The notes beneath the pieces were generated by a model. The model was not told where the DNA came from and searched no databases. It saw only the letters and a list, made by a program, of their open reading frames with translations. A stretch of DNA of 64,000 nucleotides from Orbicella franksi (taxonomy: Eukaryota). The DNA is taken from contig OZ116701.1 of the NCBI GenBank assembly GCA_964199315.1, positions 7,254,001 to 7,318,000 on the forward strand. The letters are read 5' to 3'. Position numbers and translations under genes: made by a program. Shown piece by piece: positions 21,160 through 43,701 of this stretch. The first letter of the stretch is position 1, and every line of letters starts with the position of its first letter.

Positions 21160-24100
21160 ATTCTCGCAATTAGGTGATGAGAATGAACCGGTCGTATCAA
21201 TGTACTTCGGAGATGTTCGTCATATGCACTTTCCTGATGATCCGCGAAATTCTCCGCAAGTAGAGGTAGCTGTACTGTAAAGCTAAGAGAATTGATATTT
21301 TGAGAGTTAGGTTATTTTCATCATTGATTGCCACACAGATGCTTGGCTTCGTTTAGTGGTGGTTACCTAGTAGTAAATCAAGACAATACAAGGCTCGTTA
21401 ATTCTTTTACAGGCTTTTACCCTTGACTTGCTTGTGGCTTTTTTCACGACTGACGGTATCACAAGCCGGCCCTTTTAAACTAGTAATACATATTGATGAG
21501 TTTGGATAGAGTCACGAACTAGAAATTTTAGACATGCATGGTGTTATCTTTCTTTCCACTGTTTTTTTCCTGCTAATTAAATTTTCGTAGTTAGGTAGGC
21601 TGATTCTACGAAGACGGAGATACTCGTCAAAAAAATACTTTACAAGATTATGGCGGTCACCAAAGCAAGGAAATCTGGATGAATCGAGAAGGGCGATATA
21701 ATACAAGCTTTGTTTCACGTTTGTTCGGTAGTTCCCGAGGACCGGAGATCTTACCGCAGGAAACATTAATAGCAAAATTAATACCCTAAGGGCACAGATC
21801 TCTCCAATTGTGGACATCACGTGCATGACCTTCGCATCGTGTCCTTTCCACGCCGTTTCTAGTCGTGAAGCGCGTGCAACAAAGACAAGTGAGAATGACA
21901 GGCCATTTAAATATATTTTTTAAGTTTAAAGCTCTTTTCTTACAGTTAATTATTAAAGAAATTCAATAGTTACAAGTGAATGTTCCCGACTTTCCCTAGG
22001 AAGAGAACGAGAAATTCAGAAAGAGGCTTGATTTAAAGGAGTCATAGCACGATTTGTTCGTCTTGAAAAATGTAGCCTAAGTCTTTCAAGCAGGTAATTC
22101 ACATTCCGCGTAATCTTTTCCATCCTTTACCATCCTCGCTTGTTCTCTGGTTCAAATTACCACTGTGGTATTTTTCAGCCTTAGTAAACTGTGATTTCGA
22201 AGTTTCCACAAATTGAAAGCGATGTTTTCGTGGCAAAACTTCGTAACATAGCCCTTTTAAATACGCCTCAACGACTGATTAATCCTACAGAATGTACCTC
22301 ACAACCGAGTGCGAGAAGTCTGCGTCTAACGCAAGATTCCTTTACACCCGCCTTTTAAATATATTTAGCACCATCTCCGCAAAGGATAGACAGCATAAAT
22401 ATTAGACTTATTAAATTTTAATAGAACTGCTAAATAAATACATCCACTGAACCCTTTTAATCTACCAGACACTGATAGCCTGAACTGCCAGTCACCTCAC
22501 GCCATCAGCCTACTACGATTATCAACTGAGTAAGACGAGAGCTTTGACGGAGTTTTGGTGACCAAGTTTTGGATTCAAAATTATCGTGTTGCCACAGGCA
22601 ACCTTCCTCGCTTCTAATGGTACCAATACCGTCGCGTGCAATTTCGTGCTCTTTGCTGCCAATTACGTCAAAGGCCGAAGTCGCAACTAGAAACGGAGCT
22701 AGTTGCCCGTGACAACAAAACAAGTTGAATCTTAAAACCCGGTCACCAAACTTTCGTCGCACCTTACTCAACTGATAATCGTAGTAATTACCGTCTCTCG
22801 CCCGGAGATTAGGCCGAGGGCGGGGGAGATGACTGGCATTTGAGGCCAAGACACTGACCACCCCGTAATAAATACAACATTGACCCAGTGTGCAGTAAAT
22901 ACGTAGGGTCATGAGTTTTGAACCATGACATTAACGATAAATAAATTACATGACGCTTCCGTCTATGCACTGTCCCATTATCTTCAAATATTAGTTCATT
23001 CTGTAACAAATAAAATATTCCCTTACTCCAATCCTTTCCCTCCCTATACCCAATGTAAACTATCTAAAAAAATTAACAATAATGAATTTAAAACCGACTA
23101 ATTATTGATAAAATACTATCATAATAACATCTCTTTGCTAATGGCAATATTTTCAGAGGAAAGAAATGCCACATACAAGCAAATTGTCAAAGAAATTGAC
23201 ATAAAGGCTTCATTTCCGCGTTTCAACATTGAGTTTCTAATTCGTGACAATATCTCTGAAAAGTCACACAAGTCTAGTCACAAAACTCTTGCCAACAATT
23301 CTAACCAATTAGGAGCAATGACGGCGTATTTTTAACCAATCAGGTTCAGCATTTTGAACCAATCGTGATAAGGCGCACGCGGCATTTCCCGTGCTTGTCG
23401 CTAGTTTTATTTCGAGTTCCAATTGATTCATATTGGAGTTATGGTCTGGCTCGGTCACGCAATTGTCACGCTCTAGAATGACGCGTGACAGAATCGCCTT
23501 CTAACGTAGCATGACCTAGCTTCAAAGAATAAATGTTATGATACAACATAAAGTGACAGAAAACGCCTGAAATACGTGATCTAACTTGACTGGAAAGCCT
23601 TAAATAGAGTGAGGTAACATGAAGTGACAGACAAGCACGTGACCTATCGTGACAGAAACGTCTATTGAAACGTCTACAATAGAGTGAGCAACCATGACGT
23701 GACAGACAAACACGTGACCTAACGTGACAGAAAAGCCTAAAATAGATTGGCTACCATAAGATAATCGCGTTGGGGGACCTAAGGCCCACTTAGTACCCAC
23801 GGACTAAATAATGCCCAATCTGACCGGGACATATAATTTCCCCATATTTTATTTACCTCGGGGAAATAAATAAGTCACTGCTATTATGTAATGCAAGCTA
23901 TGGTCCACGATTTAGGAGGCCAAAAGCTGCATCCCTTTAAACAGCGTCCTGGATAGCCTTCTACCGCCAGGGAAAACGTACATCCATCAATACAACTTCG
24001 GTGACTTTGAAGGAAATAACCTTGATATCCACTGGCATGTCAGACCTCCCACGTATCGTCAGATGAATCTGTCGAGCTGTGACCTGGGCCGACTCGATCC

Positions 24101-24912
24101 ATATCCTAGTGATGTAATGAGAGACACGAATGTTTCAATCGTTCATCGTTCACGACCCATACCTTTCATTCTGACTACACGAACACGAGACATTCAGTGT
24201 GAAAAGTTTATTGAGTATGCGTGCGTTAGTCAGGTCTGATGCAAACGTATCTTAATACCAAACTCTGCATCCTCACAAATTACAACTATTGGTTCTACGC
24301 CCCTCCGGGGGGGGGGGTACTCCCTGAAAAATTGGGTGGTGGTGTGCGACCCGCTTCCCAAAACCCTTACCCAGTTTATAACCAAAATCTGCGACATTCC
24401 CTACCCTATTTATGACCTGACCAAAAATTCGAAACCCTACTTATGACCTGACCCTTAAATCAAAGCCCTGTTCCAGACTTGCGTTATACTTAGTTTCCTA
24501 GTTCAGACCAATGTTAAATTACCGTAAACATAATTTGTGAAGGGTTTCCGTTGATTTTCTTTTCGATAATGATGATAAAGTAGCTTCTTCTTAACAACTT
24601 ACCCATATCAAGGCTAGAGTGCAAAAATCATACCCTATTTATGACCAAAATGGCCAAAATCAGCTAAAATCGATACCCTATTTATGACCAAAACGGCTGA
24701 AAAATCATACCCTTTGGGGTCGCACATACCTATATAGCCCATATAAGGGAGTAAATCCCTTCCCCCCCCCCCCCCCGAGGTTCTAAGAGACACAATAAAC
24801 CACTAAAAAATCACCCTTTTAGACGTGGCCAAGAATATACATGTGGAAACGTATTCCTCATCTAATGCAGGTCATGCAGTCGCACGAGACCCCACGGAAG
24901 GGCACAGAATAA
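21160..24912 (+). CDS. Candidate unannotated multi-exon gene, C-terminal part; putative exons 21160-21265, 21413-21455, 21614-21727, 23157-23262, 23945-24233, 24823-24912
   Basis: Six GT-AG-bounded stop-free segments with compatible phases (2-0, 0-1, 1-1, 1-2, 2-0, 0-stop). The frame at 23916-24236 is open for 107 codons; the final TAA overlaps AATAAA (24908-24917). The acceptor at 21614 is weak and no homologue was recognised. Confidence 0.4.
22037..22256. mobile_element. TTAA-flanked MITE (Kolobok-type ends), related to 31054-31286
   Basis: TTAA|AGGAG ... CCCTT|TTAA; internal aaaatgtagcctaagtctttcaa...atcttttccatcctttaccatcc matches the 31054 copy. Confidence 0.6.
22513..22784. mobile_element. 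MITE with TA flanks
   Basis: TA|ctacgattatcaactgagtaag ... cttactcaactgataatcgtag|TA, plus inverted ttggtgacc/ggtcaccaa. Confidence 0.75.
23540..23760. repeat. Degenerate tandem repeat (~70-80 bp unit, about 3 copies)
   Basis: Unit aatagagtgag...catga(a/c)gtgacagacaa(g/a)cacgtgaccta(t/a)cgtgacagaaa repeated. Confidence 0.75.
24305..24778. mobile_element. Non-autonomous DNA element with poly-G/poly-C ends
   Basis: ccgggggggggggtactccc ... gggagtaaatcccttccccccccc; internal repeats of accctatttatgacc; related ends at 39742 and 59833. Confidence 0.7.
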
Positions 24913-25368
24913 ATAAACCACAACACTTTGACAATCTCCTGTCAAATGCTTCAATAAGCCGTAAGCAGCCCATGACACCCGCGAGCTTCTCATTCGTACC
25001 GTTAGAATATCAATTTCAAACTAATTCATTGTCACTCAACCGTCAGAAATTACATATTCTAACAGAGAATACGATAACTGAACAACGTTTAAGTTCATTC
25101 CAACCACAGGGATTGATAGACCAAAAGCTGTGCGTAATAAATTCCATACTGCAGCATGGAATTCCTGCTGTTACCGCCTAACACTTAGTGTTAATTTGCT
25201 TCTCGTATCGTTCATAGTTGAACTCAAGCACGTTTACAAAAACAGTTACTGCAGGCTAAAGATCAATGTAAATTGCTTTTGTACATAATTTGAGTACTAA
25301 CTAGAATTAAATATTTCTTAGTATGGTTTCGCTATGAAGGCAAACGTAAATGTGTTTCTTAGAACAGA

Positions 25369-28300
25369 TCATACCTTGCTGTTGATGGCGCCCAAAGAAG
25401 AAGCCTTTTGACAATCCTTGTGCCATGAATCGATTAACTCCCAGAACTTCCTCTGGTTTGCAACAAAAGTAACGTTCTGGGGAAGAAGACAAGAAACGAA
25501 CCGTTTACAAGCGGAGCGCATTTCCGATGACGACTGAAACTGATTGTGCGGTTGTTTTGATTTTTTCTTCGTGAACTCTTACATTAGTTTACAAAACTGG
25601 TGCAAGTGTTGCAACTGGAGCAACCAATCATAACAAAGAAGCGATCTTCGCACCCAGTCAGATACAGACTGATGGGGGGCCATCGTCTACTTGTCACAGC
25701 CTCCCGCGGACTATTGATCAGAACGGGAAGCTAGGACCAAGGAATCCTGGCCCATGGAAGTTATAATACTAAAATGACAATCACATTCCACGTAAAAATC
25801 TATACATCTTGGTTATTCTTGAGGCAAGCCTGTCGAGACCTCATTACTTGAATGTTCCCCCAACTATGTCCCCAAAGCATTTTCAAAAACCTACCTCTTG
25901 TTGTAAGATCTTCATTTTAGCATTTTGCTGTGACAACTTTCCTCGAAGCTAGATAGCAAATGAAAATTGAATGAGAGAAACCAGCATTATTGGTAGCTTA
26001 TGTTACTTTCCTAGATTTCAAAATTCCCAGTTCCTTTTTCGAACACCCCGTCTCATCTGGCAAACAATCCAAAGACTTGCAATTACCTTGGTATTCTCCT
26101 GCTCCAACTGTAATAGACGGGCCTTCATTTCCTCTACATTGCCTAAAAGGACAACGACACTATGTTTATTTACGTTCCAATTTGCAAAACAACGACAACA
26201 AACACAACAATGCTAATTTTGAGAGTCCATCGTTATTTTGGTTCTTTGTGAACTTAAAATATTCAACAGGCAATGTTTTTACCTGGCTCCAGATCGCATT
26301 GGACCGCTACAGATGTCGTGGATATTTCCCTGAAATGTCAGAAAAAAAAGAAAAGAAGTCAAAGGCAAGGAAGCCGATTAAAAAACCAACGTGATACTCT
26401 AAAGTACCCTATCGTATCAACCGATCGACATTCCGTTTGCTTAAAATGTTATGATAGTTACCAAATTTTACCAACTAGGTTAAGGTCGATTACCAGCCGC
26501 TGTTCGGGAAAGTAGAAATCGATATTATTGAAGTATCCAAGAGGAACGGAGAGGAATGTAGACCGGAATCGAGAGAGCGGCGGAAATCGAACCTAAGCCA
26601 TGGTGGGACCACTTTCAAATCCTCGCCTGAATTACTATGCAGTAACGATCATGGGATAACTCCTAACTCACGGTCAGCAAATAAATTCGATTCTCATTAA
26701 CGGTATCTAATCATTTTTGCAGTAATAGATGGGAGGATTAAGGGCCTGTTTATGACCCTCTTGGAAGGATTACCCTTCTAGAAGGGTCAAAATGTAGCCC
26801 TCTTTTACTTCCTCTTGGTGATTAGCTTTTTAATTCTTATAACTGCATTTCTGACATTGTATTGATATAGTGAGGGCAAAATGATTGTTTTAACAATTAA
26901 GTAATTAAATTACTTACTTGTTGTTAAGAGAAGGTGTTGGAGGCTTCGCCTGGCCATGTATAGGAATATACTCCGCCTCACGAAGCTCCTAATACGAAAG
27001 CATTGACAATTTGAAATATCAAGCTTGGAAATTTTTGTCTCGAGCGGGGAAGCAGCTGGGCTTAATTACCAGCCGCTGTTCGGGAAAGTAGTTCGCGCTC
27101 TTCTTGCGGAGCTAGAGAGGGCCCAGGTAAATCAAGTCTAGAAAGCCGCGAAAACAGTTTGATTAAGACCGCCAGTTTCGGAAGAGATGTTACTAAGAAA
27201 CATGGCGACATTTAAGCTTTTGGAGCGTTCATGCACTTTAAAAAATTCAAAAACAATTCTACAAACACGGTACTTGCCCAGAAGAATGATTCTGAAGCGA
27301 AGAACGTTTTGAGAATATGTTCTTAACTTAATTAAAGGTAATTCTACTGACATAAAAGTGAACACCCAGGCGGAAAACAAGGCATCATCGAGCTGAATTC
27401 TGATCATCAAATATCCTTTATCAACCTCGAAAGAATTTTTTTAATTTTTGGTGCGAGAAAAAACAACAGCTCTCTCCTGAAGAAATTCTTTGCCAACGCG
27501 CACGTCAAAATACCTATTTTTGTGTCCAACTATCATAATTAAGGAGAGCGGATTTACTACAAACCAAACACATACATTTTTCAACCATGCTGGCACATTG
27601 CTCTCTGAACTGGAAAGAGAACGACCATAACTGGACGCGCTAGCCTGGGACGGGCTTCTGTTGGAATCGTGTGAGCCACTCGACTCAATGGAAATGTACT
27701 CCGCTTGGTCAAGTTCCTGTGGGGGAAGGAGAGAAAGGGATGTTTAGAAGAAAGAAGTATTCAAATTGTCAAGTACCAGCAATAGGTTACAGAAACTCTA
27801 GAAAATGTTGAAACATTTTCTCAATGTCCATGCGTCGAAAGGCCTTACTTCGTTGATGGTGGACCTTGAAAAATAAAGCCTATATATTCAGGTTCCCATT
27901 TCGTCATCGATCTCAATTTCAATCTTAAACATTGCTGATTCTTCTTAGTTAGTTATTTTTCTATCTTGGCAACCCATTATTTTGATACTTTCATCTATCT
28001 GAAGGTAACTTTACACGTTACAAAAACAACTTCATATGAAGAAGGCGAGAAATGGGTGCTTCAAAAATTCCCTTTTAAAAGTACAAAAATAAAAGCACAC
28101 TTACGTCTTGAAGCCAAGCTGGTGGCAAGCTACTCTCTTCCAGACTCCTGGGGTCAGAGCCAGACCCTGGTGCCCGGGGCGAGCGACCAACACCAGAGTC
28201 CTTCGTATCACCAAACGGATCATTTGGATTGGCAGGTCCACTGTCGTGATTGAGGTTCAGTCTCATCGGCTCGGAGAACACAGAGTCCGCACCATTATCG

Positions 28301-31300
28301 CCCGCTGTAGAAGACAAAATATTGGTTTTATCATCTGCTCAGTCGTTCTTTTTCTACTGGAATCTTCTAAGCAAACGTCTTTAAATGAAATATTTGTAGA
28401 AATAATAAAAACGAAACCCACTGTTTAAGTTGTTGATTGACTTTGAATTTTTGTTTGTTTTCCAAACACTCAGCCAATTAAAAAGGGGGCAATAACACAG
28501 GCATTTTAACAGCACGAGGCTACTTTCTCCGCCAAGGACCTCTTCATATGAGCCCGGTAACCGGGCTGGCTCGGTTACCGGGACGAATTTTGTTGTCTGT
28601 TCATATGGGAAATTTCAGCCCGGTCTACCGGGATAAAATCCAAGAAACACAACCAAAATGGTAGAACATAAACTTGTATCGTTCGCGGCTCTCGCAGCTT
28701 TGTGGACTCTTGTAACTTTACCAATAAAGCTAATTCGCCTACTCCTGAAGTGGAAATACATACAAGGCAAAAATTATGTCATTCTAGCCGCTATGTTGCG
28801 AAAGCGAAGTTATTTCGTCTAAAAAGTTGCGTCCCGGTTACCCGGGCTGGAGTGTTCATATGGGAAAATTTTCATCCCGGTTACCGAGATCTCGGTAACC
28901 GGGCCAGCCTGGCTTCTCATATGAACACATCGAGATTTTTATGAAGGAAAGAGTGGCCAGGCGAGATCCCGGAAACCGAGCCAGCCCGGTTGACCGGGCT
29001 CATATGAAGAGGCCCTAATACTCTGTCCACACTACGCCGGGGGGAATTTGAAAACGCAACACTCACCAGTCATTAAGGATTTGTGGTTGCGGAAAACTCA
29101 GTCAGAGAAACCACATGATTATCGAGATGTCACCGTTCCCGAAAAGCTTCGTTTTCAAAATGTTTTCTGTCCACACTTAAACCCCTTTCTACCTTAAACT
29201 CCTTACGAAACCGACTTTGTCAGACAGACTAAAGATTGTACTAAAAACGACAAGGTACTGAACACTGCACTTACATGACTGAGACTCAAGCGACCGTCCA
29301 GATGACCCGCCACGTTTAACAGTTCGGGAACTAAGAACACGCTCTGTGAAAAAAAAAAAAAAACAACGAAGGATGAGTTAATTTTGATGTGTTATCTTTA
29401 TTCCAAATATTTAGCAATTATTGCACGAGGTTGACCAAAATGTCGTGATTTGTCAGTGGCGAGGAAAAATTGTACGACCAAAGAAAGCGTCTTGTTAAAT
29501 TTTAAGTTTGAAACAGTTCAAATATTTTCAGTTACCTGCCACTATTAGAGAGTTCCAGTGTCTACAAGCCACACACGACAACACGTGGAGGGCGCCGAAA
29601 ATAGGTCGCGGGACAGCCGTGCACGGGATTCCACCCTTAGCCCGGGCGAGGCTGTCAGTCAATACGCCAAGCCGACCATTGTCACCCCTTCCCCAAGAGT
29701 AGATCTGATTGTCTGTGGAAAAGAAGATGTAAAACATACATGTATTGGAAGATTACACATCACAAAGAAAATTTAACCACTAAAAAAAACCGAGAAGAAA
29801 AAAAGAGGTACAAAGCTGAGAAAGGTTTAGTTCCCGATAAGATACAAAGGTGTTTTATTTTGCGTAGTCAGATATCATGTAAAGGATGGAGGGTTCATAC
29901 CTGCAGTGGCCACCACAGTGAAGTCATCTCCGCACGCCGCTTGCACAATTCGTTTGCCGACCATTTCCCCACCAATGACACAAGGTCCCGTTCGGGATTT
30001 GAAGTCTCCTACCCCCAGCTGACCGAATTTGTTGGATCCCACTGTTATTAGGCGCCCATATGCTGCGAAAAAGTCAAATAAAATAGTTGAAATTACAGCA
30101 TTGTGATTAAAGGCTTTGAATTTTCCCGCGCAATTAACAACCAATCAGGGACATCACTAAGGATTTTTTCAGATTGAACGTCTCTTGAGCGGGGAAAGAA
30201 TCGAGAGCGCAGCAGGAAAGGCCTCAGTTCTGTAAGTCAATTTTACACCATTTTGGTTGTAAAGCTTAATTAAAAGTATCATTAAACCCTAGTTCAAACT
30301 CAGCTTTGACACTTACCATCTATTACAGCTGAGTGCGATCTACCAGCGGATACAGACGCGATACTGTATCTGAAAAACACAAAACACCCATACATGAAAG
30401 GGAGACAAAAAAAAAAAAAAAAAAAAAAAATGAAAAGAAAAGAAAAACGCAAGGCAACCATATTGCTTAATTCAATTACAGAAAGAAAATTGACCTTCTC
30501 CCAAAGGAAATTATTAAGCCCAGGTCAAACGTCAAACTTAACATGAGACGAACTAAATTGCAACTTGAGTCCATACATACGGGTAAAGCTTGACTGTTGG
30601 GTCAAACGCCGAACTTAATCCGAACTTAGATGGACCAACACGTTTCATCCGTCTGCTCCAGTCAAACGTCGAACTTACCATGAACTTAATCCGCTCAGTT
30701 TAGTTCGTCTCGTGCGAAGTTCCACGTTTGACCTGGGCCTTTAATACCAGCATTCAAACACAGATCGAATAGCAACTATTTGCTGATGATCAACCCATTC
30801 TTAATCGCCCTTTTCCCCACCCTCCTTGAGGAAGAGATGGCTCACGTGATGGGTAAAGGACCCTATAAGGACTACTCGTTCCATGAGGCTAAGAAGTTGA
30901 AAGAGAAGTCAATGTGTACTCACTTGTTAAGCGGCATCACAGGTTTGGGAAGAGTGACGTACGGAAAATGGCCTGTGGTAGACTAAGAGTAAAACAGAAA
31001 GTAATATTACAGACTGAAGAGCAATGTTCATGTAAGTCAGATTAACATGTTAAAGGAGCTCAGTCCCGGTTTGCGCATATTGAAAAGTTTAGCCTCAATT
31101 TTTCAAATTCTTCGTTTGTAATCCGTGTTAATCTTCTCCATCCTTAGCCATCCTTGTTCCTTTATGGTTTATCATTATGTCTTTGGTGTTTTTCTATCTT
31201 ATTAAACTGTTATTTTCAGGTTTCCTTCAATTTAAAGGTAATTTTGTATGTGGCCAAAATAACTCAAAATACCGTGACTGAACCCTTTAAAAACTGGCTC

Positions 31301-34300
31301 AAAGAGTAGTTACTCAACATCAAAATGAAAGAAAACCAAAACCAAAAAAGAGGAATCGATCCCAAAATGAACGTCGAACAAATTCAGTCATCAGCATACC
31401 TTAACTTGTCTTTTCCTCAGTGACTGGGGTGTGTCAATTCCTAGTTGATTTTCATCGTTGTTGCCAAAACCCATCAGTCGTCCAGTTGATGTCAGCAAGA
31501 AGGTGAAGTCAGAACCACAGCAAACTGATACCACCTTACACTGCAATGGAACATCAACCTGGAACAGAACCAATCATTTTGGTCACTGTTGTACACGTAG
31601 CCTATTTCAACTCGCGGATAGTTTCCGTTGATACATAGCTCGGGAGATTTCCTTATTCAATGAGAGCCATTTTATCGCCAGTATCAAAAAATCGCTTTAT
31701 GAAGAGGCCAATCACACACGACTACACAGATCCTAGTAGTTCGTTGGGGGTCTCGAACAAGAAATTGTGCACTAATTCGCTGACGGAATTTACACGGAAA
31801 TTTCTGTCTGTAACGCTGGCTACTATACTATACATGCTGCAAAGATATGAAACGCAAAACAAAACTTTCCGGTATGGCGGCTGCGATATAGCCGAAGCAA
31901 GTATGCCGGTCCACGCATGGGATCATATTCAAGGGAGCGTGATACTGGAAGGTTTTTAGGAGACTAACTTTCATGAAGGCGTATTTTCAGAAGTTAATGG
32001 TATTTTACAAAGACACTGTTATCCGCAGATTACTAGTGGATTAAACAGAAGATCTGGACATGCTTCAGAGTATGGTGCTCTATATTGCAAATACCATTAG
32101 CCTGCGAGCAGGCTGCTCTTCGCGGGAAAAATGACGGAGGAGAGAGAGGCGAAATCCGCAAAGAACCTGAGTTCGTAACGAACCTGCTCGCAGGCTAAAA
32201 CTACCACGGCCTCCACAGCTCCTTGGAGGACGTTCCCTAAGTCACACAATATCCCGTCCACCGATCGACACGTTATAACTGCCAATCTTGAACCTTGCAG
32301 CTTGGAAAAAACGTTTCGGTAAAATAGCTAGATTGTAGGTTGACAGCGTCAGTATCACCACAAAACGACATCAGCGTAGTGAGGTGCAAACTCTTACCTT
32401 CTGAGGGGCAGCACAATCGTCTTCATTTCCCAGGCCCAAACGACCTAAAAAGACAAAATACTGTCCAAAATGCACTTCTACTCAATAACACAAGAAAATT
32501 CTATTTACGGTTTCAAGTAATATATCAAACACGAAAGACCGTGTTTGACCACATTTCCAACAACCCAGAAGAGAGTTGAAAATACGACGTGTAACGGAGT
32601 ATTTTTGACGAATTTCGAGGTGTTTGGAAATGTGGTCAAACACTCTCTTGAGTGTTTGATATATCTCCTCAATCGAGTGTAAAACTGAGGAGAAAACGGA
32701 GAATTAAACTCGTAAAAATCTATGCAATTAAGGTCAGATATCCAAACACTCTCACGGTCATGATTTACTTTGATTAAACTTGATGAATTATTAATGAGTT
32801 TGAAAAAGACTACTGAAAAATCATACACTGCAATGAAAATGATTTTTAAAAACAGCTTCTTCTTTTTCAAAACATCCTGTTGGAAACAGAAAGCTGAACA
32901 AATTCCAAAATTACATATCAGCAGGCTTACCATACTCTCCACAGCCCCAAGAATACACTTCCATTGAAACTGTATGAAGAAAGAGAAAAAGAACTGAGGT
33001 TTAGACGAACAGACAGCAAAGTGTGAAGCATTATATGCACGTCTAGGTTTTCCTTAGTAAAGTTTTCACGTCAAGACCTATTTGGTCACAGTGAAACATA
33101 TAATAATGTTCTCCGTTGAAAAGCAGAACATCTAGCAATTTACGAGACTAGTCTAGACATGAAACAAGCGACGTGCTGTGACTACACCATCGGTTCACCC
33201 CAAAACGTTTCGCACTGAAGCGGTAGTGTTCCTGCGAAAAGGATAACTTAACTTGAATGGAAACCATGAGCTTACAAAACTAATGCAAGGGCAGATGGAT
33301 TTGCTTTGCAGAAGAACAAGGCCCCGTTTGGGGAAGCTACTTTTAGCCAGCGTCCATACTACGCCAGAGAAATCTGAAAACGCAGTTTTATTTCTACGGT
33401 TGTGACTGGCGTCCACACTGATCCGTCACGAAAACAGAGCTTTTCGAAACCGCTCTTCAAACCGAAAGAATTTGAAAACGCCGACTTTGCGTTTTCGTGA
33501 GTACGGAAAACATTTTGAAAACGGAGCTTTCCGGAAACGATGGCGTCGCGAGAATCATGTGATTTCCCTGACCGAGGTTTCCTCAAACACAAATCCAAAA
33601 TTCTCTCGACCAATTAGGAACGGTAACGAAACCAGTCGTGAATAGGATTTGTGGATTGCTACGTGCGCGGTTTTAATAGTAAGCCCTGATTGGCTTGTTG
33701 CACTATTCGACTACGTTGTGGTAAGTCAGATAGAGCGATTTTCAGTTGAGCATCGTAAAACCAAAACCAAACCAATAACTTACCAATTAGACTACTCAGC
33801 CAATCTCAAACCGTAGGAAAACAAAACCAAAACCAAAGTAATTGCCTGATTACTTTCGAGTATCAATTGTAAACCGCTCTATGGTCAGCTTTCTTCAGCT
33901 GCAGACACCTGAAATAACTCTAGTCTAAACGAAGCCGTTAAAACGAAACAGCAGGAAGCTAAACCAACCTGTAAGAGCCACAATATGGCACTCTCCACAC
34001 GCTACTTGTGACACAGGGTTTTCAGCAAAGAATTCCACTCTGTAAGGCGTGGTAACTTCCTCGTCCAACTCATTGTTACAACCAATGCAACCCCAGTAGT
34101 CTGACCCAAATGTGTACAAGACACCTTCCTCTGGTCGAAAATAAAGATATATCAACATCGAAATTATCTACACCACCTTAGATATTTATATTTCCTATAT
34201 TTTCCGGCTCGGAGAATTAGGTGTTGGATGAAGACTTTACTTCTGGCTTGTGGATTTGATCCGCCTCTATCATCCAGTCTCGGTCAGAGACGCCATTTGG

Positions 34301-37300
34301 ATGTAATTTATAAGACACGAGAGACCAAGTTTCAACACATTTCCAAACACTGAGAAGATTTGTTGATGGACGAATTTACACTAGAGCCAGATTATTCGAT
34401 GCTGAATTTGTTTCAGGCGACGAGTTATCCTTCTGAGACGATTTATTCGTCTGAGACGGAAAAACGGTCTACACCATGACGCGACTGCCTCAACAACAAC
34501 AGTTTATTTCTACTACTGTAAAACCACTGTAAACAACTAAAAGAATATGTGACACAAGCTATGATTGGCAAATCTGCGGAAAGGAATGCAGATCGGGTTA
34601 AAGCAACTGTAAGTGGGGAGAAGCGTTGCGTGACGAACGCAAATAACGGCTTCGAAGGGGAAAGAAGAACAAAAAGTCATCTCATGTGGAATTTCTACCT
34701 GTAACACATGCGGTAAACTCATCTCCACAGGCCACTTGTTTTATGGCGATTCCATGCATTGCCTCAACTGGTTTAGGAATGCGATAAGCTGCAGTGTCAC
34801 CATGTCCCAGCTGACCCACCATCTGTTTACCACCATGAGCATTCTGGAAAAATCAAACAAATAATATAAACTTCAGAATGTACAGTACCAGCTCTAGGGA
34901 ATACACTCAGAGGACTCTTTGAACAAGAAGCACTTTGAACTCAACCACACAATACCTGGAAGTTGAATCACGTTTTCGGCTAATGCCAGAGAGCTTAATC
35001 AAACCACGAAGGCGATGGCAACGAGAACGCCACCAAACAAAAGGTATAATAAGTAGAACAATGGCTGTGCAAGTGCGCTATAAATCTTTGTTCATTTCTC
35101 TGCCGTCCTCTGGAAAATAACAACGTGAAATGACTAAGTTCCGCGTATTTTGTAGAATGAGAACGACGGCCGCTAATTTTTCGTATTTTCGTTTGGAATT
35201 GAACACTGGCGTTATATATTTAGCTTGAGCAAGTTCTGAGGCCAATAGGTTCACAATCGCGAAATTCAAAGGTAAAAGTAAATCCATTTTTTTAGTAGGC
35301 GTCGTCCTCTGGGTCACCCTTCTCATTGCTTAAGCTATCTACTAACATCCTGTACAGTGTCTGAAATAAAAGTTTACTTTGTACTTACAGCCCAAGTAAA
35401 GAGTTCATTTTCTACAGTGACAACAGCAAAATGGGACTGACCAACAGCAAGCTGAAATTACAAGAACGACATCATTACAGGGTGAAAAGCAGTACTGTGC
35501 GAGTACGTTCAGAGTATTATTGAATGGCTGAGAAGATGCAAAACTCGTAAGAGATGCGGCTAGAAACATCTGAAAGTGCTGTTCCCACTGAATGCACAGT
35601 AAATTCAACCAAACCTGCATGAGAAACTAAAGATGGTCCTTCTTAAAGTGCACCTAACCCCAAAAATTTTTTTTCGCTAGAACGAATCTACTTATTATTT
35701 GAAATAGTTCTGCGAAAAAAAATTTGGATTCCGTTAAATCCTCGATTTTCTGTGCCACGACGAAATCTCGAAAATAGCTCCAAAACACCGCCATTTTGTT
35801 TCACGACCGAGTTTGAGGAGAATGGGTCCAGCGGCTCTTGTGACGTCTACCCAGGAAGGTTGGATATCTCATTTCCTCTCATTTCCTTCAGGATGGTGCA
35901 ATACACATTCGAAAAGTGCGCAGAAACGCCTTCCAGAGGCGCTATCGGCTGTTGCAGCAATATTCCAGATTTAAAGAAAGATATACTGTACAATTTACTG
36001 ACAATGATCGGCTAATGGTGCAATAAAGACGTAAACGATGGTTGATTTTGTCGAACCGAAACAAGCGAACTGAATCTGTGAGAACCATTGAAGAACTCTC
36101 ACTGGAATTTGTTCCGCAGACTTTCGAACGCTATTTTCATAAATTTTCTGCTTAAAGCTAACCAGCAATTTGTAGAAATACCACCGACAACCTATATCTT
36201 CCAATCCCGCAGTATTTATAACATAACCGGCAACGTTGTGTGATCCGGTCATGATCAAGAAGCGTTATACTGATATGTAAATAGATCGCAACTGTACGCC
36301 GCTAACCAACACTTATTTCTCTTTCGATTTAGATGAAAGTCGAAGATTAATCCTCTAGAATTACATGATAACAAAATTGTTAGACTCACAGAGTTTTTCG
36401 AAGGTTTGGAAATCAGCAGTGTGACAAAGATTCTGTGCAATAGCGTCGAAAATATGACCGCGTAACATTATCTGCGGACCGCTTAGGGAACACACCCTTT
36501 CCGCTTATCCGACGAATTTCACTGCAAACTTTGAGAACAATTTACATTGGTTATTTGGAGTTACGACTTAAAACGTGTGACAATGTGAAATCGGTAATTG
36601 CATGAAATGTTTCCTTCCGCCTTGCTTCCCGCAGCTTCAAAAATACAGCTCCAAACAATACGATTTTCAATCGATCGAAGCCAATGTTTTGGAGGTCATC
36701 AAGTCTCGAAAACTGCAACACGTACGTCGCTCTTATAAACATGAAGCATTCAACTGAAAGTAAAACACAAACTGGATTTAACAGAACCTTGACAAAATAC
36801 ATTCTCGGTAAGGGGCTATAAACACGCGTGGGAATCTTATGTTTAGTTGACGAAATTACCATCCAAAGCAGTCCTTGAGTTTTCTTTCCTGCTGTTCGTT
36901 TGCCTGCTCCTCCACTTCGTATCTAGCTTTCCATTCCTAATATACAAGCAGCTCGTCCGCAAAGACGTCTTCCCCGTCGTCGCTTGAAATATTGTAAATT
37001 GCTCTCAAAGCTCTAAGCAGTGAGTTCAGAGTTGTCGAACGTGCTCGATCGAAGTTTATTTCGGAGCCTTCCGAATCGAAACTTAACTCTGACTCCAGTG
37101 ACGAAAAAGAAATCATTCTGAGACAAAACTTGGACGTTTTAGTCCCAAAATACATCGGTACGATTAGTTTTGCATTCTATTTTCTCGAGCAAATACAGTG
37201 AGTTGACTGAGGCGCTATTGTGTTTGGTTCCTGGGTAGACGTCATCAGGTACCGCCGCCCCAGACTCCCTAAAACGCGGTCGTGAAACACTTAATCGCGA

Positions 37301-40300
37301 CTTTGAAAGGGCATAGAAAATCGAGGATTCAACCAAATTCAAAAATTTCTTCGCCCAAATGCTTCAAATAAAGCCTAGATTTGTTTTAGCGAAAAAAAAA
37401 TTTGGGGGTTAGGTGCACTTTAACGCACTTCATTTTGATTACAGTTAAAGAAAACTGAGACAACCAATCAGAGAAGCTACACAAAAGTCAGTTAGGCTGT
37501 GTCATCAGTATGGAAGTATTTGAGTTGAAATTATACATGTAGCCGGTAGTCTCTCGAAAATGGGAAGACTAAACATATGAAGGGATACGCAGAATCATAA
37601 AAAATACTCAGTTAGGCTTATTTTAACATGATGAAGGGCTAATGCATAAAACGTCTGCTTCACAACTGTTTCACCTAACTGACCCAGCTCAACACTTTCT
37701 TAAGAAACTTTAATGGTTTTGCACATGTAATTTCAACATATGTAATGAATACCTGTAAAGCAGAATGTCCTCCCTGGAACATGTCCACTTTATGTGGTGT
37801 TTGTTTACCACCTCCCCAGTAAAATACCTGTTATAAATTATGACAAACATAAGCAATGAAAAACCAGGGATGATGTAACTGAACAAGCAGTATTCTGCTG
37901 TATCATTGGACCACAATGCATCCAAAGGACTACTGTTACATATTCCTTTTTGGAAATAATCCTTGTTTATCATGCTAACTAGAGTTACAATATGGTGGTA
38001 GAGTACTACTACCTAATTGTTACAAATATACTCTTTGCCATGACGTATCACTAATTGATTTTATTAGTAAGAGAAGTGAATGACCTGTAAACATTGTTCA
38101 CTGCTTTAAGTCTCAATATCGAGCTACCTAAAGGTCTACATTAACAATGGAAGGCCGGAATATTCATGATGTGAATGTTACATTCTCACCTCACTGGTTT
38201 TGGATGTAATCACAGGCACAACTTCAGTCAAGCCACTGGCAAGTCTGAAAAAAAGCATTTAACAACTTACAAAAGGCTTGAAAATAATAATCATCTTTAT
38301 TTGCCCTAGGCAGTACTTATTTATAACACAAAGGCTAGTGGGGCTGAGCAAACGACTGACATAAATAATTCAAATTGAACATAACATTGTTATGAATCCC
38401 AACCGGACAGAGGGAAACCAGTTGGCTACTTACAAGTGTGCTGAGAATCATAACAAGCCTACTGTTAGTATTCAATGGGTGAAGAAAATTAAAATCACAC
38501 CTGTGAGCCATTGTAACAAAGGCCCTCTTACAATTATTGTTGCCTTTCTCGTTTGTTTTCAATTCAGATCATGCACTGCTATGAAGGAACATGTTTCTCA
38601 ATGTTTTGGTTTAGCTATGAAGCCCTCCTTTGGGTTCTGCACTAACTATGGACTGTATTTTACAAGTCGTTAAGAAATATTTACTAAGTTAGCTACATGT
38701 ATCTCCAAAAATCTAGTTTTTACATAAACACACGACCCTTGTAAAATAAGTCTGCGTTACTCTAACCTGGCCCTCCTGGTTGTAGCATTCAATTCCCAAA
38801 CTTTCTTTTCCATCTCTCTTTGAACATTGGAAAGAAAAGATACCTTAAAGAGTAAGTATTAAAAAGTGGAAAACTAGTGTCATAGAAGTACTTTTTTTCC
38901 TTCCAGCATAATTCTTTCAGTGTGGTTATATATAGTTCCATATACACTCAGTGACTTATTATAAGTACTGCAGGCTGTAATAATAAATTACACTTTTAAT
39001 GTTAATTACCAAACTCAGTATTTTTCCAAAACGTAGTGACTTACCTTCCTAAATTGCTCAACAGCGGCATGGCCAGAACTGCATCAACTGTTGGCCTGTC
39101 ATCTGGATTCTAGTATTAACATTGTTTTACCATTAACAACAATTTTATATTTGATTTTTCGGTAGTCTGATCTATATAGCACATGTTCATATATTAATCA
39201 AACATGAACCTAAGGCATTAAGTAAAATATAATGGCTCCCAATAAAATATCATATTGTTCTTACAAGGCAGTGGTCTGCTTTTGTGGAGTAAAAGATGTT
39301 GATCCTTTAAAAACTGAGACTGGTGTTCTCCAAAGTGTAATGATATGGGCCTCAATTTTTTGGTGCTTAGTTAGCTTACAGCTTCCACACGCATGTCAAC
39401 AATATATCGTTAAATTACATGTCCACACTGGAGGCTTATTTACAACTTTATACTGGGTCAGACTTTTTTGTGTTACCTGTGACAACAGTATTGTTACCAG
39501 GCTGCTCATCTCACTTGTGTACTGTGGGCTGATATCTTCAAATTCTCCCTTTACTATATCAGAAACTAGTCTAAGAGGATTCTAAAGAATAGAGAGGTGG
39601 TCTCACTGTTTTGATCTACACAAGAATTATACAAGATCAGATTAAGTGATTTGTATGTGGGAAGAATCAATCAAGTCCAACAGATAATGTAGAATAACAG
39701 TATGTTATAAAGTAGCCAAGCAAAGCAAGTTAGAAAACTAGAGGGAGGGAGTTAGTTCCTATAATAGCCTATATGGGTAGGCTCCACCCAAAAGGGGTGC
39801 CTTTTTCAGGCTTCAGGTATATAAAAGGGTAGGGATTTCACAAGTTGAGGTATACAAAAGGAGACGGAACTCTGTCATGTAATTATTTAAAAGGGCCTTA
39901 AATTGAAGTGCTTTGAACAAATGCACCTTATGGTGGATCATTTTTAAAAGCACTACATAAAAATAACAAGAGGACACTCACTTTTCTGGCAAATTATTCA
40001 TAATACATCGGCCAGTTATGAAAGTGTTTAAAACGGGTACATTTTTACTAAGACGTATACAAAAGGGATACCTTTTCAAATGGTATACAAAAGGGTAAGG
40101 GGTTGGGCTCATGGGTGGAGCCATATTAATCTGTGTTGAGTACACCCCCCCCCTGGAGGGGGGAGGGGTCAGAAACCATATGCACATGGAACTTAAGGTA
40201 CATTTTACTTACAGTGGCATCAAACACTTTTCTTAAGGTGAGCATTTCGTACAAGACACATCCCATTGCCCACATGTCGCTCTTCTGGTTGTACCTATAT

Positions 40301-43300
40301 GGAGTGGACATGTATTTCTTAAAAACCAGTGAGGGCTGTACCACAGCAGATTATCACACATGGATCAATTTGACATGAAACTGATAGTTACAGAAATGAA
40401 ATGGTAAGATGACAAATGGAACAGAATGGAAATAAATAGATGGGCGTTGCCTTTTTTCAGGGTACGTACATGTACAACCTCAAACAGTACCCAGGTTACC
40501 TAGGGCTGCTGCTCAGCCTTGCTAATTCCTGCACGTGCAAGGTTCCGACAATTTACTAAACACTGGGTTTTAAGTGGATTGTAAAAAGTACTAAGAATAA
40601 GCAAACTACTTGCAGTATGAACCTACTTTTGTCCTTGAACTATTTCTGGTGACATGTAATATGGTGTTCCAACAACCTGATGAGGAGAAATATTCAATCA
40701 GTGACTATGTGTAGACAGTATAACTTCAATCTACATTTCTCTGGTCCTTCTATCTGGAACAATTTGGATGAAGAGATAAAAAGTTTATCTGCAAATTTAT
40801 TTAAACAAACCTTGACTAAGCAATTTCTAAGTTCTTACCCTTAATGCTAGCTTACCGGTAGTATTTTTTCTTTAAGTTACTATCGCTCTTAATTAAACAA
40901 TGCTCTGTCTATAACTGGTACTGTTAATACTTAAATTGTATATTTCTTTTTATATTTATATCTATCTATATTTTTTTCTCTTTCTATCTCTTCTTTTCTT
41001 TATTTTTCCTACAACTGATTTCAAGCGTAATAATTCTTGTAACTACTCAGCTTGTTTAGTTTTCACTATTTTGAGTAGTTTTTTTTCGCTTATTTAAGTT
41101 TAATGTATTCTTTTGCTGAATGATATTCTCTGTATTTAATGCAAAATAAAATGGTTGACATTGTTGTTGTTGTTGTTGTTGTTAGATGTACAGGTAGCAC
41201 AAAGAGGGTGATCTAATATAAAATATGAGACTTAGAAAGAAAATTTCCTTCTTTTATTATTCTTCTGGTTCAATGTTGTTATGCTTGAATTACGTAGTGT
41301 ACAAGTACTAATTAAGTAGTTCTCGACTGGCACTTTGAAATCTTATGTTTAGACTTGATTAATAATCAAAAGAGTATAAGAATGACACTATTTACAATGA
41401 ACATCAGTCAGAGATTATACACTGTACATGTACTTACAGATTCTGCCATATATTCTCTTGAACCTTTCAACACAGTTGCAATACCAAAGTCTCCAAGCTT
41501 TACCAAGCCAGTTTTAGTCAAGAATATGTTTAGGGTTTTTATGTCTCTGAAAAGGGTTGACAAAAATGAGAGGCTTGCTGCAAAATGTAATTACTTTTAT
41601 TAATAAGAGTAAATGCCTATGCTGCCAATGAGGGTTGGATGCCCAAGAGCCTGGCAGGGCTGGTACCACCGCCACAAATATGGGTCAGTACAACACCCCA
41701 TAAGCTTGCCTACCAGTACCCCAACCATGAGCCCCACATGACAAACCCATCCTCAGCCTAAGCACCCATCACAATGATACTAACGTTCAGTGAAAAAATT
41801 ACAAACAGAAGGGAAATAACTTTGAGAACTGACAAACTAACTAAAAAGATACTTTACTAAAGCTAAAAGGAGAGGGAGGGAAAAAAAAAGAAAAATGAAA
41901 GTCTTGAACACTACAAATGCTAAGCAGATTAAAACAATGACAAACAACATACAGTACCTGTGAACTATACCACACTCATGAATGTGACTCATACCAGAAC
42001 ATATTTGGAAAAAATACCAGATCACAATCTGCAAACAACAAAGATCAGCCATAGCGAGATACTTTTATTAATTCATCAATCTGTAACTTGAGAGTGATTT
42101 CGTGAAAAACACCATCTTTTATTAACAGTAGCCAAATAGAGGCAGTGTTGTGAAAGTTAAGGGCAAAACGCATTGCTATCTACCCAAAGTACCTCTCTGA
42201 GCATCATAAGACAACTTGGCAAGAAGAAAAATGATTATCATAAATACCTCTTCTGCAAATAGTTCTTTTTGACTGCATATCTTGTCATTGAGTGTTCCAC
42301 CTGAAATTTAATATTAATATAACATAATTTTGTAAGGTTAGGAGGCAGGATGAGAAATATTCAGCCCTCTAAGCATTTAAGGGTGGCCCTCAACCTAAAA
42401 CTGCCCTTGATTAGCCTAATCAAATTGAAAAGTGCTTCCCAGTTTTCTGGATTGTCCAATAAAAGGTCAGAGAATTAAGTAATACGTACAGTAACACAAT
42501 ACTGTAAGGTTTGACAATGTACATGTCATATGATGGATCAAAGAAATCTTCCAGAAAAACAAGATGCCTAAAAATCAGCATACAGATAATTTACTCATCT
42601 GTAACTTACTAAACTCTATGCAGAAAGAGGCCTGACCTGAAAATTCTCTTTCAATAGACTTGACAGAAAAATGGGTGTCAGTTTATTCTGTTACCTAGCC
42701 ACTTTTGAATTGGTAATAAAACATTATTGCAAGCACTTAATCTTCAAGATTGTACTATAAACATACCATTGCAATATTCCATTTCAATCAGTAGTGATGT
42801 ACCATCAATGTAATGATTAAAGTATGTCACAATATTGGTGTGATTCAACAAGGACAGGATATCAACTTCTTTCTCAGCATCGATTCTTTCCTTCTCACTT
42901 GCACGACTTAAGTTCACTTCCTTAACAACCACAAGGACATTGTCCTGAATGAAGTAGCAAAAAAATAATTTAAAAACAACTCATAACTGTTCTTAACATC
43001 AAATTAAAATCATTTCTTTTTATTTTAAAAATATTTAGTATGGATATTTGAAATATTTGTACATATTAAAAAATATATATTTATAAAAATTAAAAATATT
43101 TAGCATAAATATTTAAATATAGTACTTAAAAGTACTGTACATGTATTTTTAAAACAAGTAATAAGTTAGCAACAAGATTGATGTGCACTATATATACTGT
43201 TTTTTTGGAGCAGGGTAGCCACATGTAAAGTTTAAATTTCGGGGTTTTTCCTCATTAATCTCCATGTTGAGCCAGATTAACTTTTTCAAAGCATTAATTT

Positions 43301-43663
43301 AGTTTTCATAAGAGAACTTAATATTCTACTGACATTGATTTCATACATTCTGCTTTTCAATGATAGAAATGATCGAATTATTATATAATTTCATGTTTCT
43401 TTCTCGGCAACCTATTCTTGGTGCCAGGAAGCTTTATTGAGGGTTGGTGCTAGTTTTAATTTAAGAAAAGCAGTATTCATGTATACGTACATCGTCATTT
43501 GTTTCCAACTGATCACGGGCTGATTCATTTTAACTTGAGGAATTTGGATTTCTAGATGCTTAGTAACAGTAATTGGACTGAGTGGAGTACAATTCAGTGA
43601 GTAATTCGGCCTTGCGAAGTGCGAGGTCGATTTGAAATTACGAGCATGATTACATGTACTCCT

Positions 43664-43701
<38 letters not shown>

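What the first reader, a model, noticed from the sequence alone, without database searches (positions are those of the whole stretch)
26918..28304. NEK9 carries two tandem copies of the NEK6/NEK7-docking helix, each split by an intron at the same position
Seen: spliced exons 24-26 give SLPPAWLQD|[11 protein letters not shown] and, 47 aa later, NVPAWLKN|[11 protein letters not shown]; both have a phase-0 intron at the same point, which indicates duplication of an exon-intron-exon unit. Known: human NEK9 has one such motif (about 810-828, GWLRKELENAEFIPM), the peptide that binds and activates NEK7; W, L, L(+5), aromatic(+10) and I(+11) are kept in both copies here. Inference: this NEK9 may dock two NEK6/7 molecules per chain, changing the NEK9-NEK6/7 activation cascade; I am not aware of this being described.
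Basis: partly seen in the sequence, partly recalled or inferred. Interest (0 to 1): 0.72.

Follow-up and report, generated by a model that had tools for sequence, protein, structure and literature searches.

The report
Doubled NEK6/7 docking motif in coral NEK9
This stony-coral NEK9 kinase gene really carries, and transcribes, two tandem copies of the short peptide that in humans docks and activates NEK7. The doubling is old and shared by all the reef corals I looked at, by hydrozoans and by amphioxus, and whether two kinases bind at once is still untested.

Summary
On the minus strand the NEK9 orthologue (CDS 45470..24040) has exon A (28304..28105, ends PPAWLQD), exon B (27716..27576, 47 codons) and exon C (26988..26918, starts [10 protein letters not shown]).

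- **Structure:** both motif copies are split by a phase-0 GT-AG intron at the same residue pair (human K814|E815).
- **Chance:** the repeat scores 60 against a shuffled mean of 23.4 (0 of 5000 shuffles reach it).
- **Expression:** one RNA contig and raw reads join A-B-C.
- **Key residues:** both copies keep every residue whose mutation abolishes NEK7 binding in human NEK9.
- **Partner:** the genome has one NEK6/7 gene, with the docking groove and Tyr97 intact.
- **Distribution:** all scleractinian full-length models have two copies. Octocorals keep the three exons with a decayed copy 1. Two hydrozoan-lineage sequences and amphioxus also have two copies. 144 of 167 orthologues have one.
- **Intron age:** the intron inside the motif is also present in Lingula, Patiria and Takifugu.
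- **Splicing:** a Montipora predicted isoform lacks exactly exon B, which leaves one hybrid motif.
- **Binding:** two-kinase docking is plausible but not shown; the complex prediction gave no answer.
- **Literature:** I found no paper describing this.

It is a new variant of a known docking system, of moderate interest.

The parts
24040..45470 (-). NEK9 orthologue, coding span. The start Met is at 45470 and the TGA stop at 24042..24040. [quoted passage not shown]
   Evidence: Exon-by-exon tblastn of P0311 (Orbicella faveolata Nek9-like, 958 aa) gives 91-100% identity. The last exon and stop were located. The cluster representative has precomputed Pfam kinase and RCC1 hits.
28105..28304 (-). 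Exon A. It encodes a Ser/Gly/Pro-rich linker and ends with the first half of docking motif copy 1 (LPPAWLQD, 28128..28105).
   Evidence: Sequence; RNA joints 28304|29275 and 27716|28105.
27717..28104 (-). Intron 1, 388 nt, phase 0, GT-AG, inside copy 1 between the residues equivalent to human K814 and E815.
   Evidence: ('skips 388', CT..AC on the + strand).
27576..27716 (-). Exon B, 141 nt (47 codons), phase 0 at both ends. It holds the second half of copy 1 ([11 protein letters not shown], 27716..27684), a 28-residue Ser-rich linker, and the first half of copy 2 (NVPAWLKN, 27599..27576). It is the exon created by the duplication and is compatible with cassette splicing.
   Evidence: It is identical to residues 781-827 of P0311.
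26989..27575 (-). Intron 2, 587 nt, phase 0, GT-AG, at the same position inside copy 2.
   Evidence: 'skips 587'.
26918..26988 (-). Exon C. It starts with the second half of copy 2 ([11 protein letters not shown], 26988..26956). The donor is CAA|gtaagt. An in-frame TAA (26916..26914) follows if the intron is retained.
   Evidence: joint 26329|26918 seen in 3 raw reads and one contig.
25375..26329 (-). Four downstream exons: about 26329..26283, 26141..26087, 25948..25895 and 25476..25375. They encode the coiled coil ([25 protein letters not shown]...) and a conserved FWELIDSW element.

Best explanation
The window encodes the coral orthologue of NEK9. In the ancestor of eumetazoans the NEK6/7-docking motif (human 808-825) was already split by a phase-0 intron after WLxx.

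A tandem duplication with breakpoints in the two flanking exons copied 'end of exon, intron, start of next exon'. This created a new 47-codon middle exon and therefore two complete motifs about 45 residues apart. It happened before hexacorals and octocorals separated.

Shown: both copies are in the main mRNA. Both keep all residues needed for NEK7 binding in humans. In stony corals both are far better conserved than the linker around them. The partner kinase, its docking groove and its autoinhibitory tyrosine are present.

Inferred: each copy can dock one NEK6/7 C-lobe, so one NEK9 chain can hold two NEK6/7 molecules and a coiled-coil dimer can hold four. Human NEK7 is activated when dimeric NEK9 forces back-to-back NEK7 dimers. 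The tandem sites would therefore favour or strengthen that induced dimerisation within one chain. Because exon B is phase 0 at both ends, skipping it restores a single hybrid motif, so splicing could set the number of docks.
For: - **Anatomy, significance and RNA chain:**
- **Key residues:** P809, W811, L812, L816, F821 and I822 abolish binding when mutated, and E815 makes a salt bridge (PMC4632185). Both coral copies carry P, W, L, E, L, Y and I at these positions.
- **Constraint:** mean pairwise identity among 7 scleractinian sequences is 0.95 for motif 1 and 0.86 for motif 2, against 0.61 for the linker between them and 0.44 for the 20 residues after motif 2.
- **Same three-exon structure:** found in Porites lutea and in the octocoral Xenia.
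- **Old intron:** the same phase-0 intron is inside the single motif of Lingula and Patiria and Takifugu.
- **Partner:** the genome has one NEK6/7 locus with A116, R131, L132, K140, Y141, N90, K96 and Y97 conserved.
- **Mechanistic premise:** the isolated peptide does not activate NEK7; NEK9 self-association does (PMC4632185).
- **Splicing:** Montipora isoform X4 lacks exactly the exon-B residues and has one hybrid motif.
Against: - No binding data exist for either coral motif.
- In octocorals copy 1 has decayed (Xenia W to S; both species lack the aromatic-Ile pair), so two working docks are not required in all anthozoans.
- Copy 1 has Ser where human has P823, and Glu where human has P825.
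- No exon-B-skipped read was seen in this species, but the depth was only 2-3 junction reads.
- Simultaneous occupancy and cis-dimerisation are inference only.
Confidence: 0.6

Rival explanations
1. Only copy 2, the one most like the bilaterian and human motif (IP at 822-823), is the working NEK6/7 dock. Copy 1 is kept in stony corals for another partner or purpose, or binds much more weakly.
For: Copy 2 shares 12-14 of 20 residues with the single motif of Lingula, while copy 1 shares 8. Octocoral copy 1 has lost W (Xenia) and the aromatic-Ile pair, while copy 2 is retained. Copy 1 lacks P823 and P825.
Against: Across the scleractinians sampled, copy 1 is at least as conserved as copy 2 (0.95 against 0.86 mean pairwise identity). 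It retains every residue that abolishes binding in the human alanine scan. P823 was not among the residues reported to affect binding, and P825A only reduced it.
Confidence: 0.2
2. Both copies bind NEK6/7 but not two kinases at once. They act as alternative or re-binding sites for one kinase (avidity, local concentration), or they are used one at a time through exon-B skipping. The stoichiometry of the cascade would then be unchanged.
For: Exon B is a phase 0/0 cassette, and a predicted Montipora isoform skips it. The W-to-W spacing is only 39-47 residues in all two-copy taxa.
Against: All six Logan transcript-derived proteins of the Orbicella cluster, the RefSeq model and the X4 contig include exon B. 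A linker of about 30 disordered residues is long enough in principle to separate two kinase C-lobes; this is my inference and was not computed.
Confidence: 0.15
3. The repeat is a chance resemblance or a gene-model artefact.
For: None found.
Against: 0 of 5000 shuffles reach the observed score. RNA joints support the exon chain. The feature is conserved across corals with the same exon structure.
Confidence: 0.01

Closest known systems
Human NEK9 residues 810-828, the minimal NEK7-binding region (crystal structure of NEK7 Y97F with the NEK9 peptide; Haq et al. 2015, PMC4632185)
   Same: Both are in the same protein (orthologue) and in the same place: the disordered region between the RCC1 domain and the coiled coil. 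The motif is P-x-W-L-x-x-E-L-x-x-A-E-aromatic-I, with all binding-critical residues. The same phase-0 intron lies inside the motif, shown in Takifugu, Patiria and Lingula. The partner groove residues in NEK6/7 are conserved.
   Different: The coral has two copies in tandem on one chain instead of one. Tyr replaces F821. Copy 1 has Ser and Glu at 823 and 825. The vertebrate insertion aligned with the LC8 site (aa 940-949) is absent from all invertebrate sequences aligned.
NEK9 of Clytia hemisphaerica, a related hydrozoan-lineage transcript (P0033), and Branchiostoma lanceolatum
   Same: They have two full motifs 39-42 residues apart at the same place in the protein.
   Different: The Clytia gene has lost nearly all its introns. 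The copies are not clearly orthologous one-to-one with the coral copies. By parsimony amphioxus is probably an independent duplication: 2 gains against 1 gain plus at least 3 losses.
Paired neighbouring docking motifs for PLK1 on CENP-U (PMC13161223, abstract only)
   Same: The general idea is shared: two adjacent short linear motifs that recruit the same mitotic kinase.
   Different: The kinase, the motif and the recognition domain are unrelated. I did not read that paper beyond the start of its abstract.

Membership tests
NEK9 (Nercc1) orthologue | N-terminal NEK-type kinase domain followed by an RCC1-repeat propeller | tested here: met
   The window's exons match P0311 and P0179 along the kinase and RCC1 parts at 91-100% identity. 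Those proteins carry precomputed Pfam PF00069 and PF00415/PF13540/PF25390 hits and are named Nek9-like by NCBI.
NEK9 (Nercc1) orthologue | C-terminal disordered region with a NEK6/7-binding motif, followed by a coiled coil | tested here: met
   The motifs are in exons A-C. The heptad-like [25 protein letters not shown]... lies downstream.
NEK9 (Nercc1) orthologue | Single-copy orthologue: best hits are the NEK9 proteins of other animals, and there is no second copy in the genome | tested here: met
   The top hits are NEK9 across Metazoa. In the own genome only the window locus matches the NEK9 kinase domain above 80% identity.
NEK6/7-docking motif of NEK9 (human 808-825) | Residues whose mutation abolishes NEK7 binding (P809, W811, L812, L816, F821, I822), plus E815 | tested here: met
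   Copy 1 is [14 protein letters not shown] and copy 2 is [14 protein letters not shown]. All positions are kept, with F821 as Y.
NEK6/7-docking motif of NEK9 (human 808-825) | Contributing residues C808, M824, P825 | tested here: not met
   Copy 1 has P, I and E at these positions; copy 2 has V, I and H. In humans these mutations only reduce binding. Many single-copy invertebrates also differ at these positions.
NEK6/7-docking motif of NEK9 (human 808-825) | Physical binding to the C-lobe groove of NEK6/7 | not testable with these tools
   The complex prediction gave no answer. Indirect evidence only: the groove residues A116, R131, L132, K140 and Y141 are conserved in the single coral NEK6/7 gene.
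Cassette (alternatively skipped) exon | Length a multiple of three with matching phases, and transcripts both with and without the exon | tested here: inconclusive
   Exon B is 141 nt and phase 0/0. A skipped form exists as the predicted Montipora isoform X4. No skipped read was seen here at a depth of 2-3 junction reads.

The most novel reading that the evidence does not exclude
In cnidarians a single NEK9 chain dimerises NEK6/7 in cis through its two tandem docks. Release of the Tyr97 autoinhibition would then no longer depend on NEK9 self-association through the coiled coil, and inclusion or skipping of the 47-codon exon B switches NEK9 between a bivalent activator and a monovalent one.
Probability: 0.25. 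Interest if true: 0.6.

Novelty: new variant of a known kind. Interest (0 to 1): 0.45.

Why it matters
The current model for NEK7 and NEK6 activation holds that NEK9 works by bringing two kinase molecules together. In that model the docking peptide alone does nothing, and dimerisation of NEK9 is required (PMC4632185).

A natural NEK9 with two docks on one chain is a ready-made test of that model. If the model is right, a coral C-terminal fragment without its coiled coil should still activate NEK6/7.

The case also shows how an intron sitting inside a short linear motif makes the motif easy to duplicate by tandem duplication and easy to return to one copy by exon skipping or loss.

It changes no major picture of mitosis, and the sequences are already in public databases, so its value is as a tidy, testable evolutionary variant.

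Tried and rejected
1. **Complex prediction.** I submitted two copies of near-own NEK6/7 (P0423:29-304) with the NEK9 fragment P0311:768-842. The score was 0.31 against a mark of 0.34, giving a verdict of no answer. It counts neither for nor against binding.
2. **Sequence search of solved structures.** Searching with exon B and with the C-terminal fragment found nothing. The NEK9 peptide chain is under the 20-residue limit of that library.
3. **Finding a NEK6/7 protein id.** The representative search with a kinase exon gave mostly exon fragments and no NEK6/7. P0078 turned out to be NEK2. Own-genome candidates L005, L007, L008 and L009 were other kinases, and L006 is the NEK8 kinase domain. MAFFT misplaced several short NEK6/7 exons. 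A reduced alignment (A6) finally brought P0423 into the list.
4. **Genomic loci not obtainable.** Branchiostoma, Dendronephthya and Montipora were not on record because the proteins in hand are not the longest products. The Ptychodera gene is too long. I therefore could not read the amphioxus exon structure or the Montipora exon B.
6. **Degenerate second copy in single-copy bilaterians: rejected.** MAFFT placed stretches such as LPAGL or LPYEEL under coral copy 2. In Patiria that stretch lies in one uninterrupted exon, and the resemblance is two or three residues.
7. **Coral FWELI as the tetrapod LC3-interacting WCLL: rejected.** It matches instead a W-x-x-I element at the end of the coiled coil that fish and sharks also have.
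8. **One-to-one orthology of the motif copies between anthozoans, hydrozoans and amphioxus.** The 20-residue identity matrix is too weak to decide this.
Full report
**What is in the window**

The feature lies on the minus strand. Reading the reverse complement gives three exons with canonical GT-AG borders.

| Part | Coordinates | Size | Content |
|---|---|---|---|
| Exon A | 28304..28105 | 200 nt | ends ...SLPPAWLQD |
| Intron 1 | 28104..27717 | 388 nt | phase 0 |
| Exon B | 27716..27576 | 141 nt, 47 codons | [11 protein letters not shown], Ser-rich linker, NVPAWLKN |
| Intron 2 | 27575..26989 | 587 nt | phase 0 |
| Exon C | 26988..26918 | 71 nt | starts [13 protein letters not shown] |

Both introns fall between the same two motif residues. 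The best 19-residue self-match in the translated exons scores 60, against 23.4 +/- 4.5 in 5000 shuffles (maximum 47), so the repeat is not chance. At the DNA level the motif halves are only about 50% identical, and the introns do not align. That points to an old duplication.

**The gene**

A kinase-exon search of the representative library led to full-length NEK9 proteins. Searches with those and a cluster look-up showed that the closest public protein is Orbicella faveolata 'Nek9-like' XP_020614459.1 (P0311, 958 aa).

- Exons B and C of the window are identical to P0311, and the other mapped exons are 91-100% identical.
- The CDS runs from Met at 45470 to a TGA at 24042..24040.
- The protein has a kinase domain, RCC1 repeats, a disordered region with the two motifs, a coiled coil and a tail.
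- No second NEK9-like locus is seen in the genome.

**Expression**

I laid three raw poly-A RNA runs and one set of RNA contigs on 24900-29800.

- A 2453-nt contig of run X4 carries the uninterrupted chain 29715..29536, 29344..29275, A, B, C, 26329.., 26141.., 25948.., 25476..25374.
- Raw reads of X23 cross A-B (2 reads), B-C (2 reads) and C-next (3 reads).
- No A-C joint was listed, but the depth is too low to exclude a minor isoform.
- Six Logan transcript-derived proteins in the Orbicella cluster all contain both motifs.

**Comparison with the human motif**

Haq et al. (PMC4632185) mapped NEK7 binding to NEK9 810-828.

- P809A, W811A, L812A, L816A, F821A and I822A abolish binding.
- E815 makes a salt bridge and a hydrogen bond with NEK7 K140 and Y141.
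- C808A, M824A and P825A only weaken binding.

Coral copy 1 ([17 protein letters not shown]) and copy 2 ([17 protein letters not shown]) keep every essential position, with Tyr in place of F821. The intron sits between the equivalents of K814 and E815, inside the helix.

**The partner**

- The genome holds one NEK6/7 locus (G000:C1, about 9266976-9279023, minus strand, ten exons).
- It keeps A116, R131, L132, K140 and Y141 of the docking groove.
- It also keeps N90, K96 and Y97 of the autoinhibition and back-to-back interface (read).
- A Logan protein (P0423) is identical to nine of the ten exons.

**Distribution**

Among 167 NEK9 orthologues of at least 800 aa in hand, 144 have one motif, 17 have two, and 6 fail the pattern.

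- **Two copies:** all scleractinian full-length models (Orbicella cluster, Oculina, three Porites, Acropora palmata and A. digitifera), Clytia hemisphaerica, an unnamed transcript that is 67% identical to Clytia, and Branchiostoma lanceolatum.
- **Porites lutea:** it has the same A/B/C exon structure.
- **The octocoral Xenia:** it also has three exons with introns at the same points, but copy 1 has decayed (W to S, no aromatic-Ile). Dendronephthya copy 1 keeps WL only.
- **Timing:** the duplication therefore predates the hexacoral-octocoral split.
- **Hydrozoans:** the 20-residue identity matrix cannot tell whether they share the same event, and the Clytia gene has lost its introns.
- **Amphioxus:** parsimony favours an independent duplication, because echinoderms, hemichordates, vertebrates, molluscs, annelids, nemerteans and a brachiopod all have one copy.

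**Age of the intron**

The single motif of Lingula and Patiria and of Takifugu is split by a phase-0 intron at exactly the same place. The intron is therefore ancestral. A tandem duplication with breakpoints in the two flanking exons explains exon B as a fusion of 'start of the downstream exon' and 'end of the upstream exon'.

**Constraint**

Among seven scleractinian sequences spanning both major clades:

| Region | Mean pairwise identity |
|---|---|
| Copy 1 | 0.95 |
| Linker between the copies | 0.61 |
| Copy 2 | 0.86 |
| Next 20 residues | 0.44 |

Both copies are islands of conservation in a fast-evolving disordered region, which argues that both are functional in stony corals.

**Splicing**

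Exon B is phase 0 at both ends. The predicted Montipora capricornis isoform X4 lacks exactly the exon-B residues and so has one hybrid motif: the first half of copy 1 joined to the second half of copy 2. The architecture therefore allows a switch between two docks and one. I could not verify the other Montipora isoforms.

**Mechanism**

*Shown:* two intact, expressed and conserved motifs, and a conserved partner.

*Established for human proteins:* the peptide alone does not activate NEK7. Self-associated NEK9 (through its coiled coil or a GST fusion) induces back-to-back NEK7 dimers that release Tyr97.

*Inferred:* each coral NEK9 chain can hold two NEK6/7 molecules, which would favour that dimerisation within one chain, and four per coiled-coil dimer.

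The single complex prediction returned no answer and is not used as evidence.

**Novelty**

Full-text searches for NEK9 together with cnidarian, coral or amphioxus terms, and for tandem or evolution terms, found no description. The sequences themselves are public. I class this as a new variant of a known docking system, of moderate interest.

Noticed in passing
window 29000-29330: RNA depth here is about ten times that of neighbouring NEK9 exons (up to about 400 in X4). There are many loose ends and 'goes back' joints at 29140-29176, and polymorphic sites at 29149 and 29168. It looks like a transcribed repeat element next to, or overlapping, the small exon 29344..29275.
   Followed up: no
window about 28203-28168 (minus strand, inside exon A): The element [12 protein letters not shown] upstream of copy 1 is almost invariant in stony corals, and its DSG core recurs in octocorals, amphioxus and Lingula. 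It could be a phospho-dependent motif. Its function is unknown.
   Followed up: no
window 26916-26914: An in-frame TAA lies directly after the exon C donor. Retention of that intron would give a NEK9 that has both docks but lacks the coiled coil.
   Followed up: no
window 25476-25375 and 24105-24040: A FWELIDSW element just after the coiled coil is shared by corals and hemichordates. Amphioxus, Lingula, ray-finned fish and a shark have related forms (IWALIDQW, IWSLISRW, RLWAAI). It is not the tetrapod LC3-interacting WCLL. Coral NEK9 ends in DDTWEV.
   Followed up: partly
alignment A4: The vertebrate insertion that aligns with the LC8-binding site of human NEK9 (aa 940-949, cited in PMC4632185) is absent from every invertebrate NEK9 aligned. 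LC8 control of NEK6 binding may therefore be a vertebrate addition.
   Followed up: no
G000:C5:9046983-9047771 (L006): The NEK8-like kinase domain of this genome is encoded in one uninterrupted exon of about 270 codons. This contrasts with the many small exons of NEK9 and NEK6/7.
   Followed up: no
Part of the RNA signal there may be the NEK9 3' end.
   Followed up: partly
L001 (Clytia hemisphaerica NEK9 locus): The hydrozoan NEK9 gene has a single intron (3254 nt for 945 codons), against more than 25 exons in the coral. This is a strong example of intron loss.
   Followed up: partly
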